64,000 nucleotides of DNA from Macrostomum lignano (Eukaryota): the NCBI GenBank assembly GCA_002269645.1, contig NIVC01001630.1:186001-250000 (forward strand), written 5' to 3'. The notes under the pieces are model-generated. The model was given only the letters and a program-made list of their open reading frames with translations. It searched no databases and was not told where the DNA came from. A program made the translations under genes and the position numbers. Below, one piece after another: positions 17,456 through 20,400 of the stretch (position 1 is its first letter; every line of letters begins with the position of its first letter).

Positions 17456-20400
17456 TTACTCTTTGTGGATTCCTGCAGTTTTTGCTATCTCAGCATTCAA
17501 TTTGGACTCGCTTCTGATCCCAGTTTGCTTCAGAAGTTCCGGGATGCTAGCCGCATTTAGTTGCTTCATCAGGCTTTCAATGCTTCTGATGTTTAGCTGT
17601 GCCATCAGATCAGAGACACTGCGAATATTAAGTTCAGACATCAGACTTTTGACACTTTTTAATCCAAGCGTGTGCAGAAGATCACTTAGTTTTGAGCTGC
17701 CCGTCTCAACAATCAGACTGGAGAGATTCGAAATATGAAACTGCTTCATCAGAGACGTAACATTGCAGATACCAGTCTGTTCCATGAAAGCCTTTAAAGT
17801 TGGAAGACCCACTTTACGAACGATTTGCCGTAGGTTCTTGGCGTCAAGTTGCTTCATTAGTCCTTGAACATCCGAAATTCCCAGCTGACTCATTAGACCT
17901 TGGAGATCAGGAATGCGTACTTGTTTCATCAAGCTCTTAAGGTTCTGAAGTCCGACCTCTCGTAATAGTTGGTGCAGACTCTTTGACCCCAGCTGGTCCA
18001 TCAGCTTTGGAACGTCGGTAATGTTAAACTTGGTCATCAACTCTTTAAGATCGTCAAATCCAGCTTCCTTGATTAGAGCGCCCACTGTTCGTACACCGCA
18101 ACGCTTCAGCAGTTGACGTAGGTTCTTGGCGTCGAGTTGCTTCATTAGTCCTTGAACATCAGAAATTCCCAGCTGACTCATTAGACCTTGGATATCAGGA
18201 ATGCGTAATTGTTTCATCAAGCTCTTAAGGTTCTGAAGTCCGACCTCTCGTAATAGTTGGTGCAGACTCTTTGACCCCAGCTGGTCCATCAGCTTTGGAA
18301 CGTCGGTAATGTTAAACTTGGTCATCAACTCTTTAAGATCGTCAAATCCAGCTTCCTCGATGAGAGCGCCCACTGTTCGTACACCGCAACGCTTCAGCAG
18401 TTGACGTAGGTTCTTGGCGTCGAGTTGCTTCATTAGTCCTTGAACATCAGAAATTCCCAGCTGACTCATTAGACCTTGGATATCAGGAATGCGTACTTGT
18501 TTCATCAAGCTCTTAAGGTTCTGAAGTCCGACCTCTCGTAATAGTTGGTGCAGACTCTTTGACCCCAGCTGGTCCATCAGCTTTGGAACGTCGGTAATGT
18601 TAAACTTGGTCATCAACTCTTTAAGATCGTCAAAGCCAGCTTCCTTGATTAGAGCGCCCACTGTTCGTACACCGCAACGCTTCAGCAGTTGACGTAGGTT
18701 CTTGGCGTCGAGTTGATTTATGAGGTCTGTTAGAGATTTGATTTGTAGTTCGTGTCTCAGGCCACGCAAACTTTTTATTCCGAGTTGCTTTAAGAATGCC
18801 ATTAGGTTTTTGGAACCCGTTTTTTTCATCAGTTGTGACAGCTTCTTTACATTTAACTCTTTCATTAGCCCATATACACCCTCAATTCTTGCCTGAGTTA
18901 ATAAATCTGGAATGCTTGTCACACTTAGCGTTCGAACTAGATTATTGAGGTTTGGCGAGTTCAGCTTTTTCATCAAAGTGGCCAGGTTTTGAGCCTTAAG
19001 GCGTCGCATTAGGTCACGGAAGTTCAGCTGCTTTAGCTTCTGCTGAAGTGCAGAAAAGCTGGACACCTTCAGAGCATTCATCAGTGTTTCGATATTTCGG
19101 CCATTGGCAAGGTGCCTCAGTCCGGGGATTTTTTTCAGGGCATGTACACTCTTGAGAGGTTCCAAATATTTTGACAACTTGTCAGTTATTCTGTTGACTT
19201 TCTCGACGACTGGAATTCTGGATATCGCTTTTTTAATTAACCTATCGGCAGCTTTGATTTTCTTTAGTCCCGAAATTGATTTGATAACTTTGCGAACTTT
19301 TTTCTCCATTCTTCTGAGCTTCCGGAGTCCCGGAATCCTGTCCAACACTCCCGGGCCGTACTTGTCAACGAGTTTTCTCAGAACAGGGTTCCTGTTTACA
19401 ATGCCTGTGATCTTGGCGTGTACACCTTTGATTTTCGCAACAGCAGGCAGTGCGTTGAGCTTTGCAAAAACTTTTGTCTTTAACGCTGTAAGCTTTTTTA
19501 CAATCGACAGGCTCTTCAAATTTGCAGCTATTTTAGACTTTATTAAAAGAATCTTCTTTACTATCGGTACAGCCTTCAATTTTGTGATGATGAACGTCTT
19601 GGCTGCCACAAGCGGCTTTACAAACAGCGTCTTTGCAGCGGCAGCCGCGACAGCTTTGAATTTAACGACAGCAGCTGCGACAGCTTTGGCTTTAACAAAA
19701 GCGGCAGCGGCGGCTTTGACTAGGAATGGCACAAAGAAAAATTTTTTTGGATGCCTTCGTGGTTTCTGAAATTATTATTAATAATTAACTCAATTAGTTG
19801 GGGTGAATAAATTTAGACAATCAGACAATATAGCTGGTATCTCGTAAATGTATTACGTGTTATTCGATAACAACCAATATGAAAGCTAATGAGCGCTACG
19901 GTATCAAAAATGTACTATTGAGCGCATACATGCGCAACCCCCCTGATTTACACTGGCCATGCGATTTAATTTTTGACCAAAAAATGCGACTTACCTGTGA
20001 AAGAAACCCTACAGCAACATTGACGCAAATTTTGGGTAAACGGCAGGAGTAACTATAACTGTTCTTTAAGGGCTAAATGCCTCGTCATCTAATTAGTACT
20101 ACGTCTGTATTCTTTGGGGTGGGCATTTTTGCAACTCCTGGTCCACCACAATTTACGGTGGCTAGATCGGCCAGGTCAGCCAGCAGTTGCGCATGTATGA
20201 TTGAGCGTGAGCGTGTGTCTGAGTGCATGTCTGGCGCTTTGTATCAGGGTGACTACCAGCCCACTTGCAAACTTCTACTTGTCTTATGCCTTATTGATGT
20301 TTACTCACATCCAATTCTTGAGGTCCAACGTACGCGGGCAGATTGGCTGTCTGCAGAGCATCCTTAGACTCTCTGGCCTCCTCGACATCCAAATCTGTTG

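What the first reader, a model, noticed from the sequence alone, without database searches (positions are those of the whole stretch)
17456..19075. Novel 12-residue amphipathic repeat array with an 8-unit super-repeat
Seen: about 45 consecutive 12-aa units (e.g. LNIRSVSDLMAQ, LGSKSLHQLLRE, LDAKNLRQLLKR) with regular hydrophobic positions and S/T/D/N caps. Eight units (96 aa, 288 bp) are recently triplicated, each with one Cys (KRCG). Inference: a short helix-turn solenoid or lipid-binding/oligomeric scaffold. I do not recognise a described repeat family.
Basis: partly seen in the sequence, partly recalled or inferred. Interest (0 to 1): 0.75.

Follow-up and report, generated by a model that had tools for sequence, protein, structure and literature searches.

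The report
Flatworm gene with 45 short-helix repeats
A real but unannotated, very basic protein gene of the flatworm Macrostomum lignano carries 45 back-to-back 12-residue helix-turn units; the unit is the type seen in the N domain of the bacterial Mg2+ channel MgtE, so the fold class is known, while the gene and its function are not.

Summary
On the minus strand, one open frame (17456-19765) encodes 45 consecutive 12-residue units with no insertion or deletion. The consensus is [LVI]xxL[ML][KR][QE]LG[IV]x[NSD]. Eight units (288 bp) are triplicated at 98-99% identity, and each copy has one Cys.

It is true coding sequence, not a minisatellite artefact. Only this frame is open, the invariant Leu uses all six Leu codons, and third codon positions are nearly random.

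The window is Macrostomum lignano or a very close relative. The frame opens directly at a TTTCAG trans-splice acceptor, in phase with the ATG that ends the species' spliced leader. That would give a 770-aa protein, pI about 10.5.

Each unit carries helix start and stop signals. Pfam, a profile search of PDB sequences and Foldseek on a modest AlphaFold model (pLDDT 62) all point weakly to the MgtE N domain, then to PUF, ARM and FliG solenoids.

The MgtE_N score is additive over repeats. Single segments fall below the Pfam cut-off, so membership is not shown.

Similar strict 12-mer arrays occur in bacterial eCIS-core, tape-measure, RTX and S-layer proteins. They also occur in unrelated animal and plant proteins.

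No ortholog was found. Transcription and function were not tested. The most likely role is a rod-like cationic scaffold.

The parts
19766..19771 (-). Putative spliced-leader trans-splice acceptor TTTCAG (matches YTNCAG). The exon starts at 19765.
   Evidence: Sequence read. The acceptor motif [T/C]TNCAG and the 35-nt SL ending in ATG come from PMC8629364. The frame-opening stop TAA lies at 19772-19774, immediately upstream of this acceptor motif. The junction is in phase 0 with the ORF. Inferred; no RNA data.
17456..19765 (-). Single coding exon of 769 codons plus stop (TAA at 17456-17458). With an SL-donated Met this gives a 770-aa protein with pI about 10.5.
   Evidence: The other five frames over the repeat carry 17-72 stops.
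19094..19765 (-). N-terminal Lys/Ala/Val/Ile/Leu-rich region of 224 aa (pI 11.7; a 226-aa window that includes the two codons upstream of the acceptor has net charge about +51). It holds roughly ten helices of about 20 residues, each starting at Pro or Gly.
   Evidence: Lag-20 autocorrelation of 0.43 and composition. 20-mer register. AlphaFold helices of 18-20 residues, pLDDT 57-74 over residues 81-170 of the 758-aa ORF as submitted from its GTG. No Pfam hit.
17474..19093 (-). Array of 45 units of 36 nt (12 aa), helix-turn type, consensus [LVI]xxL[ML][KR][QE]LG[IV]x[NSD].
17834..18697 (-). Recent triplication of an 8-unit (288-bp) block: units 11-18, 19-26 and 27-34.
   Evidence: TRF. Unit-by-unit comparison. 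4-6 differences per pair of copies, synonymous/nonsynonymous 2/2, 3/1 and 3/3.
17308..17313 (-). AATAAA polyadenylation signal about 145 nt after the stop codon.
   Evidence: Sequence read. Its function is inferred.

Best explanation
This is a lineage-restricted, unannotated protein-coding gene of Macrostomum lignano or a very close relative. It is a single exon, most likely trans-spliced to the spliced leader, whose terminal AUG supplies the start codon. The product would be a 770-aa, strongly cationic, all-alpha protein.

The C-terminal 540 residues are 45 copies of a 12-residue module. Each module has an N-cap, a two-turn amphipathic helix, a Gly C-cap and a short linker. Stacked modules bury positions 1, 4, 5, 8 and 10 and form an elongated alpha-superhelix of the kind seen, with only 8-10 such helices, in the MgtE N domain and in FliG ARM-like motifs. 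The array grew by unit duplication, and most recently by triplication of an 8-unit block, in a genome where tandem duplication is rampant.

The protein most likely acts as a rod-like structural or scaffolding element. Its length would be set by unit number, and its polycationic N-terminal region and basic solenoid surface would hold it on a polyanionic partner.

Shown: the repeat, its coding nature, the helix-turn periodicity and the organism. Inferred with moderate support: the superhelical fold and the SL-AUG start. Speculative: the scaffold or polyanion-binding role.
For: Coding nature. Only one frame is open. Leu at unit position 4 is encoded by all six Leu codons. Pairwise nucleotide identity among 28 non-redundant units is 0.39, 0.58 and 0.30 at codon positions 1, 2 and 3. 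TRF sees only the 288-bp period and not a 36-bp one, so the 12-aa period is kept at protein level.

Organism. The neighbouring M12B-like ORF is 95% identical to M. lignano BOX15_Mlig015519g1. The window is collinear at 91-98% identity with M. lignano contig NIVC01000695.1.

Gene model. A TTTCAG acceptor sits right at the 5' end of the open frame and in phase with it. There is no in-frame ATG for the first 152 codons. The M. lignano SL ends in ATG, and the acceptor motif is YTNCAG. Use of the flatworm SL AUG as initiator has precedent (Cheng et al. 2006, cited in PMC9851317). AATAAA lies 145 nt after the stop.

Fold. Capping signals recur every 12 residues. AlphaFold puts one short helix per unit. 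Pfam gives MgtE_N 56.9 bits. A profile of this array plus similar arrays has the T. thermophilus MgtE N domain as joint top hit among PDB sequences (E=1.4e-4, 97 residues ungapped, tied with Pumilio), followed by other PUF proteins; a second MgtE chain (8gpv) is at E=0.018 and FliG is weak and not significant at E=0.13. Foldseek's best local fits are MgtE cytoplasmic domains (8gpv, probability 1.0, rmsd 2.8 A over 101 columns; also 8gps, 2oux, 2yvy), then PUF, importin-alpha/ARM and FliG. The MgtE N domain is a right-handed bundle of ten helices (PMC3604715).

Charge. pI is 11.7 for the N-terminal region and 10.0 for the repeats.
Against: There is no transcript or protein evidence. The gene is absent from the protein collections searched, although neighbouring M. 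lignano genes are present.

The AlphaFold model has only modest confidence (pLDDT 62, pTM 0.42). No Foldseek match reaches E<=0.001. MgtE_N scores for single unique segments are below the Pfam cut-off.

The putative signal peptide is atypical, so the cellular location is unknown. No partner or function was tested.
Confidence: 0.5

Rival explanations
1. The ORF is an accident of a minisatellite-rich genome: a non-coding tandem array that happens to be open, as many arrays in this window are.
For: About 37% of the window is tandem repeat. Many arrays give long ORFs in several frames. The gene is not in the annotated protein sets.
Against: Only one of six frames is open over 1.6 kb. Units are only 42% identical at the DNA level but keep the hydrophobic and capping pattern. 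Leu4 uses six different codons, and third positions are near random. TRF finds no 36-bp period. The frame stays open for 224 further non-repeat codons and starts at a splice acceptor.
Confidence: 0.06
2. The array was acquired by horizontal transfer from bacteria. There the same 12-residue arrays sit in eCIS-core (DUF4157) polymorphic-toxin-like proteins, in tape-measure proteins and in surface proteins.
For: The best library hits (E down to 3e-23, about 300 residues ungapped) are mostly bacterial proteins of these kinds.
Against: Identity is only 14-35%, about what this protein's own units share with each other. The single best hit is a fish MICAL-like protein with an unrelated minisatellite-coded array, and others come from a snail, a plant and a wasp. 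E-values are therefore inflated by repetition, and the pattern arises convergently. None of the bacterial flanking domains is present. The gene has host-like GC content, a flatworm splice acceptor and a poly(A) signal.
Confidence: 0.05
3. It is a nucleic-acid-binding solenoid, related in function to PUF repeats (3 x 12-residue helices per repeat) or to tandem helix-hairpin-helix arrays. The basic surface would bind RNA or DNA.
For: pI is about 10. PUF proteins are among the top profile and fold matches. There is a weak IMS_HHH match and an LGI-type turn.
Against: There is no 36-residue superperiod. No Pfam PUF hit appears, and HhH is below its cut-off. The matches are at the level expected for any 12-periodic helical array.
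Confidence: 0.15
4. It is a lipid- or membrane-binding amphipathic-helix protein (apolipoprotein- or perilipin-like).
For: The hydrophobic pattern is regular. The N-terminal helices are Lys-rich and punctuated by Pro or Gly every 20 residues or so.
Against: Helix caps every 12 residues prevent long amphipathic helices. Five of twelve positions are hydrophobic, which fits a buried core. The N-terminal hydrophobic moment (0.274) is within one SD of shuffles (0.248 +/- 0.03). No apolipoprotein or perilipin Pfam hit was found for this protein.
Confidence: 0.08

Closest known systems
MgtE intracellular N domain (Pfam PF03448; e.g. T. thermophilus MgtE, PDB 2yvy/2yvx)
   Same: The module is the same: 12 residues, hydrophobic at positions 1, 4, 5 and 8, with a polar or acidic cap before each helix. 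The alignment shows MgtE's own units in phase over 97 ungapped residues. It is the best Pfam, PDB-profile and Foldseek match. Short helices stack into a right-handed superhelix.
   Different: MgtE has 8-10 helices; this protein has 45. MgtE_N is acidic, senses Mg2+ and is followed by CBS and membrane domains. Here the protein is basic (pI 10) and has no CBS or channel part. Single-segment Pfam scores are sub-threshold. A eukaryotic orphan gene is involved here, not a bacterial transporter.
Bacterial and phage proteins with long strict 12-mer arrays: eCIS_core/DUF4157 proteins with C-terminal toxin-like domains, tail tape-measure-like proteins, RTX/Planctomycete extracellular proteins and S-layer-homology proteins
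   Same: They carry arrays of 5-41 units in perfect 12-residue register with the same L..Lh..LG pattern. Pfam labels many of them MgtE_N, though not all (P0006, P0027 and P0055 have no MgtE_N hit), and IMG auto-names two of them (P0002, P0021) 'Mg/Co/Ni transporter MgtE'. They appear to serve as spacers or rulers in secreted or injected proteins.
   Different: No flanking domain is shared. Identity is at the level of the bare pattern. The charge is acidic or neutral in most bacterial arrays and basic here. Common descent is not demonstrable.
PUF (Pumilio) and ARM/FliG alpha-solenoids
   Same: Helices of about 12 residues stack into a superhelix. These proteins are among the top profile and fold matches.
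   Different: They have repeats of 36-42 residues with three distinct helices and defined ligand-binding faces. Here every helix is equivalent, and the only superperiod is the recent 8-unit duplication.

Membership tests
MgtE_N (PF03448) | Pfam HMM score above the gathering cut-off (25.9 bits) | tested here: inconclusive
   The whole protein scores 56.9 bits, E=3.2e-15, over 6 stretches. The three unique segments tested alone give 17.2 bits, no hit and 14.9 bits. The score is additive over weak repeats.
MgtE_N (PF03448) | Right-handed superhelix of short stacked helices | tested here: inconclusive
   An AlphaFold model (pLDDT 62) superposes on MgtE cytoplasmic domain 8gpv at rmsd 2.8 A over 101 columns, probability 1.0. 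However, E=0.04 and no hit reaches E<=0.001.
MgtE_N (PF03448) | Context: followed by a CBS pair and the MgtE membrane domain; acidic Mg2+-sensing surface | tested here: not met
   No CBS or MgtE channel domain was found. pI is 10.0-11.7.
FliG | Pfam FliG_N/M/C domains | tested here: not met
   No FliG family appears among the Pfam hits for this protein. PDB profile hits to FliG have E=0.13-0.54.
PUF repeat proteins | 36-residue three-helix repeats and a Pfam PUF match | tested here: not met
   No PUF Pfam hit. Autocorrelation is equal at lags 12, 24 and 36, so there is no 36-residue superperiod.
Helix-hairpin-helix arrays | HhH motif match above the cut-off | tested here: not met
   IMS_HHH scores 16.1 bits against a cut-off of 24.4.
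eCIS_core/DUF4157 polymorphic-toxin-like proteins | N-terminal eCIS core domain, conserved WGFIWGE region and C-terminal effector domain | tested here: not met
   These are present in hits P0002-P0020 and absent here.
Exchangeable apolipoprotein / perilipin 11- or 22-mer repeats | Long uninterrupted amphipathic helices with 11-residue periodicity | tested here: not met
   The period is 12, with a Gly C-cap and an N-cap in each unit. There is no Pfam hit. The hydrophobic moment is not above shuffles.
M. lignano adhesion protein Mlig-ap1 (Lys/Arg-rich repeats) | Lys/Arg repeats of the SRKPRRKNRKSRKP type, with lectin, EGF and other adhesive-protein domains | tested here: not met
   The description in PMC6410801 shows a different repeat type and different domains. 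None of these occur here.

The most novel reading that the evidence does not exclude
Strict 12-residue, one-helix-per-unit arrays could form an unrecognised, widespread class of alpha-solenoid 'rulers', currently mislabelled MgtE. On this reading the class has arisen repeatedly in bacteria, phages and animals. This flatworm protein (45 units, polycationic, start codon donated by the spliced leader) would be its longest eukaryotic example and a lineage-specific structural component of a flatworm organ, for example sperm, cilia, rhabdites or adhesive organs.
Probability: 0.2. Interest if true: 0.6.

Novelty: new variant of a known kind. Interest (0 to 1): 0.4.

Why it matters
The array is an unusually long and regular natural example of a solenoid built from single capped two-turn helices. 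Its 45 units are in perfect register, and a recent 8-unit triplication catches array growth in progress. That makes it useful for repeat-protein classification and design.

It also exposes an annotation problem. Pfam MgtE_N scores accumulate over such arrays, so non-transporter proteins get called 'MgtE'.

For flatworm biology it adds a probable orphan gene that standard annotation missed, possibly because its start codon comes from the spliced leader. Without expression or functional data the biological importance remains open.

Tried and rejected
1. The word-indexed homology search found nothing, either with the ORF or with a mixed profile of 12-mer arrays. In both cases 8000 candidates were collected and none scored, probably because repeat words swamped the index. 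Only the exhaustive HMMER search gave hits.

2. A pseudo-alignment of the protein's own shifted windows was meant to feed AlphaFold. MAFFT slid the rows back onto their identical parts, so it was useless (A2). A3, which adds arrays from other proteins, was used instead.

3. Single-sequence AlphaFold of the whole ORF gave pLDDT 47.5, so only its secondary structure is usable.

4. phmmer of the ORF against PDB found nothing. The 48-column profile A1 gave only chance-level hits.

5. Exact-product look-ups for the ATG-started and the GTG-started ORF are not on record.

6. I tried to fetch the second M. lignano copy of the gene. The locus obtained through the neighbouring gene (L001) ends 220 bp short of the ORF, so no dN/dS between copies could be computed.

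7. A link to the Lys/Arg-rich adhesive protein Mlig-ap1 was rejected because its repeats and domains differ.

8. Rfam finds nothing in the window. There is no paralogue elsewhere in the window.

9. Amphipathicity of the N-terminal region is not significant against shuffles.

10. PHROGs hits of the flatworm protein are scattered short matches to unrelated families and were treated as noise.

Full report
**What is there.** The finding lies on the minus strand. The ORF listing gives an ORF at 17456..19732 (758 aa from a GTG), and the frame is open back to a stop at 19772-19774. When the translation is cut into 12-mers from IETLMNALKVSS (DNA 19093), 45 units follow in a single register with no insertion or deletion, down to 17474. 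Five residues and a TAA follow.

The position-specific composition is sharp:
- Position 1 is L, V, I or F in 44 of 45 units.
- Position 4 is Leu in 42 of 45.
- Position 5 is M, L, I or V in 42 of 45.
- Position 8 is mostly Leu.
- Position 9 is Gly in 22 units and N or D in 12.
- Position 10 is mostly I or V.
- Position 12 is N, S, D or T in 41 of 45.

Hydrophobicity autocorrelation is 0.72-0.75 at lags 12, 24 and 36, and about -0.3 beside them. TRF reports a 288-bp period, 3.1 copies, 98% identity. These copies are units 11-18, 19-26 and 27-34. They differ at 4-6 nucleotides per pair, and each contains one Cys in LLKRCGVRT.

**Is it a gene or a minisatellite accident?** The question is real, because roughly 37% of this window is tandem repeat and many arrays are open in several frames. 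This array behaves differently.
- Over the repeat the other five frames carry 17-72 stops.
- The 28 non-redundant units are only 42% identical at the DNA level.
- Identity by codon position is 0.39, 0.58 and 0.30.
- The nearly invariant Leu at position 4 is written with all six Leu codons.
- TRF sees no 36-bp period.

The periodicity is thus maintained at the protein level, which is the signature of long-term purifying selection. The recent 288-bp triplication shows the genome's tandem-duplication habit acting inside a coding array.

**Organism and gene model.** A neighbouring ORF (31762-32523) is 95% identical to M. lignano protein BOX15_Mlig015519g1. The corresponding contig piece (NIVC01000695.1:462610-473521) is collinear with window 19985-32542 at 91-98% identity. 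The window is therefore M. lignano (another haplotype, homeolog or assembly) or a very close relative.

The open frame has no in-frame ATG for its first 152 codons. The first one, at 19309-19307, has a good Kozak context. Directly at the 5' end of the frame lies ...aataatTTTCAG|AAACCA.... PMC8629364 gives the M. lignano spliced leader as a 35-mer ending in ATG, and YTNCAG as the trans-splice acceptor motif. The junction after this CAG is in phase 0 with the frame, and the frame-opening stop lies immediately upstream of the TTTCAG motif (19772-19774).

Use of the flatworm SL's terminal AUG as the initiator is documented in Schistosoma (Cheng et al. 2006, cited in PMC9851317). I therefore infer a single-exon, SL-trans-spliced gene giving M+769 residues (MKPRRHPKKFFFVPFLVK...). 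AATAAA lies 145 nt after the stop. This is inference. No RNA data could be consulted, and exact-product look-ups found nothing.

**The protein.** pI is about 10.5 overall. The protein has no Trp, three Tyr and four Cys.

The first ~224 residues are Lys/Ala/Val/Ile/Leu-rich, with pI 11.7 and a net charge of about +51. They show a looser period of about 20 residues (lag-20 autocorrelation 0.43), with Pro or Gly opening each segment. AlphaFold draws these as 18-20-residue helices with its best confidence there, pLDDT 57-74. The region has no Pfam match, and its hydrophobic moment is not above shuffled controls.

Each repeat unit reads as a complete small helix. It has an N-cap at position 12 of the preceding unit, a helix with hydrophobic residues at i, i+3, i+4 and i+7, a Gly C-cap at position 9 and a hydrophobic residue after it. 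With start and stop signals every 12 residues the chain cannot form long helices or a coiled coil. Five buried positions per unit call for stacking.

**Fold evidence.**
- Pfam's only above-threshold repeat-like match is MgtE_N (56.9 bits, six stretches).
- Tested alone, the three unique parts of the array give 17.2 bits, nothing and 14.9 bits against a 25.9-bit cut-off. The global score is additive, and family membership is not established.
- The exhaustive HMMER search of 1.84 billion representatives found 55 proteins, none above 35% identity.
- A profile built from this array plus several of those arrays (A3, all gaps in multiples of 12) has the T. thermophilus MgtE N domain as joint top hit in the PDB sequence set. 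The match has E=1.4e-4 and aligns 97 residues without a gap, which shows that MgtE_N is itself 12-periodic. Pumilio ties at the same E-value and other PUF proteins follow; a second MgtE chain (8gpv) is at E=0.018, and FliG is weak and not significant (E=0.13-0.54).
- AlphaFold with A3 gives pLDDT 62 and pTM 0.42, with one helix per unit.
- Foldseek against the PDB has no hit at E<=0.001. Its best local superpositions are MgtE cytoplasmic domains (8gpv: probability 1.0, rmsd 2.8 A over 101 columns; also 8gps, 2oux and 2yvy). PUF, importin-alpha/ARM and FliG follow.
- The MgtE N domain is a right-handed bundle of ten helices (PMC3604715).

Three independent but individually weak lines thus agree on a MgtE-N-like superhelix of stacked short helices.

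**What the library hits are.** Most are bacterial.
- eCIS_core (DUF4157) proteins carry a conserved WGFIWGE region, a 5-31-unit array and assorted C-terminal domains.
- There are tail tape-measure-like proteins (PhageMin_Tail and PHROG TMP families).
- There are RTX/Planctomycete extracellular proteins and an S-layer-homology protein.
- Pfam labels many of these arrays MgtE_N (not all: P0006, P0027 and P0055 have no MgtE_N hit), and IMG auto-names two of the proteins (P0002, P0021) 'Mg/Co/Ni transporter MgtE'.

The single best hit, however, is a fish MICAL-like protein with a GVPDLAGVASRL minisatellite-coded array. Others are a snail degenerin, a plant protein and a wasp protein. E-values against repeats are inflated by repetition, and this pattern evidently arises convergently. 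I therefore claim analogy of design, not homology, and I find no support for horizontal transfer. No ortholog or paralogue of the flatworm protein turned up anywhere.

**Mechanism.** The best-supported reading is an elongated alpha-solenoid rod whose length is set by unit number. It is preceded by a polycationic helical region, and the solenoid surface is also net basic (about +34). The comparable bacterial arrays sit in secreted, injected, surface or tape-measure proteins, where they plausibly act as spacers or rulers. In MgtE and FliG the motif is a protein-protein interaction surface.

I therefore favour a structural or scaffolding role, anchored on a polyanionic partner. That step is speculative. 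Nucleic-acid binding (PUF- or HhH-like) and lipid binding are weaker rivals. The Cys of each super-repeat sits at core position 8 and is probably just a buried residue.

**Verdict.** The helix-turn solenoid inference is supported at moderate confidence. The claim of a wholly undescribed repeat is weakened, because the unit type is that of MgtE_N. Long strict arrays of it are not curated as a family, though, and this gene is an unannotated orphan. Novelty: a new variant of a known kind. Interest is moderate.

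Noticed in passing
window 21496-22490: A segment of about 1 kb carries a Mos1/mariner-type HTH ORF (21687-22046, minus strand; Pfam HTH_48 and others). It is present in the window but absent from the collinear M. lignano contig NIVC01000695.1, so it is an insertion or deletion polymorphism between copies.
   Followed up: partly
window 26974-30489 (-) and 31193-32542 (+): Two divergently oriented reprolysin/ADAM-like (M12B) metalloprotease paralogues, each with a signal-peptide-like first exon. On the M. lignano contig the minus-strand one is annotated as a 532-aa Reprolysin protein.
   Followed up: partly
whole window (e.g. 8-999, 8492-9639, 13001-14130, 14864-16339, 46406-47628, 48578-50008, 51498-52614): About 35 separate micro- and minisatellite arrays with TRF score >=200 cover roughly 24 kb of the 64 kb. 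Many produce long spurious ORFs in several frames.
   Followed up: partly
window 16354-16722 (-): An ORF just downstream on the same strand has a sub-threshold match to the Inscuteable LGN-binding domain (19.7 bits against a cut-off of 27). It may be an exon of a neighbouring gene or an operon partner.
   Followed up: no
window 19094-19765 (-): The N-terminal part of the same protein has its own looser repeat of about 20 residues (for example IPGLRKLRRMEKKVRKVIKS / ISGLKKIKAADRLIKKAISR / IPVVEKVNRITDKLSKYLEP). It is extremely Lys-rich and has no database match.
   Followed up: partly
window 19104-19769 (+): A 221-aa antisense ORF overlaps the Lys-rich region. It is Phe/Leu-rich, as expected from reading AAA/AAG codons backwards, and is probably an artefact.
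   Followed up: no
proteins P0002 and P0021 (library hits): IMG names non-transporter proteins (an eCIS_core protein and an RTX-type extracellular protein) 'Mg/Co/Ni transporter MgtE', apparently only because their 12-mer arrays accumulate MgtE_N score.
   Followed up: partly
window 37058-37705 (-): An ORF with long poly-Gln/His tracts and no Pfam match. It may be an exon of a Q-rich regulatory protein.
   Followed up: no
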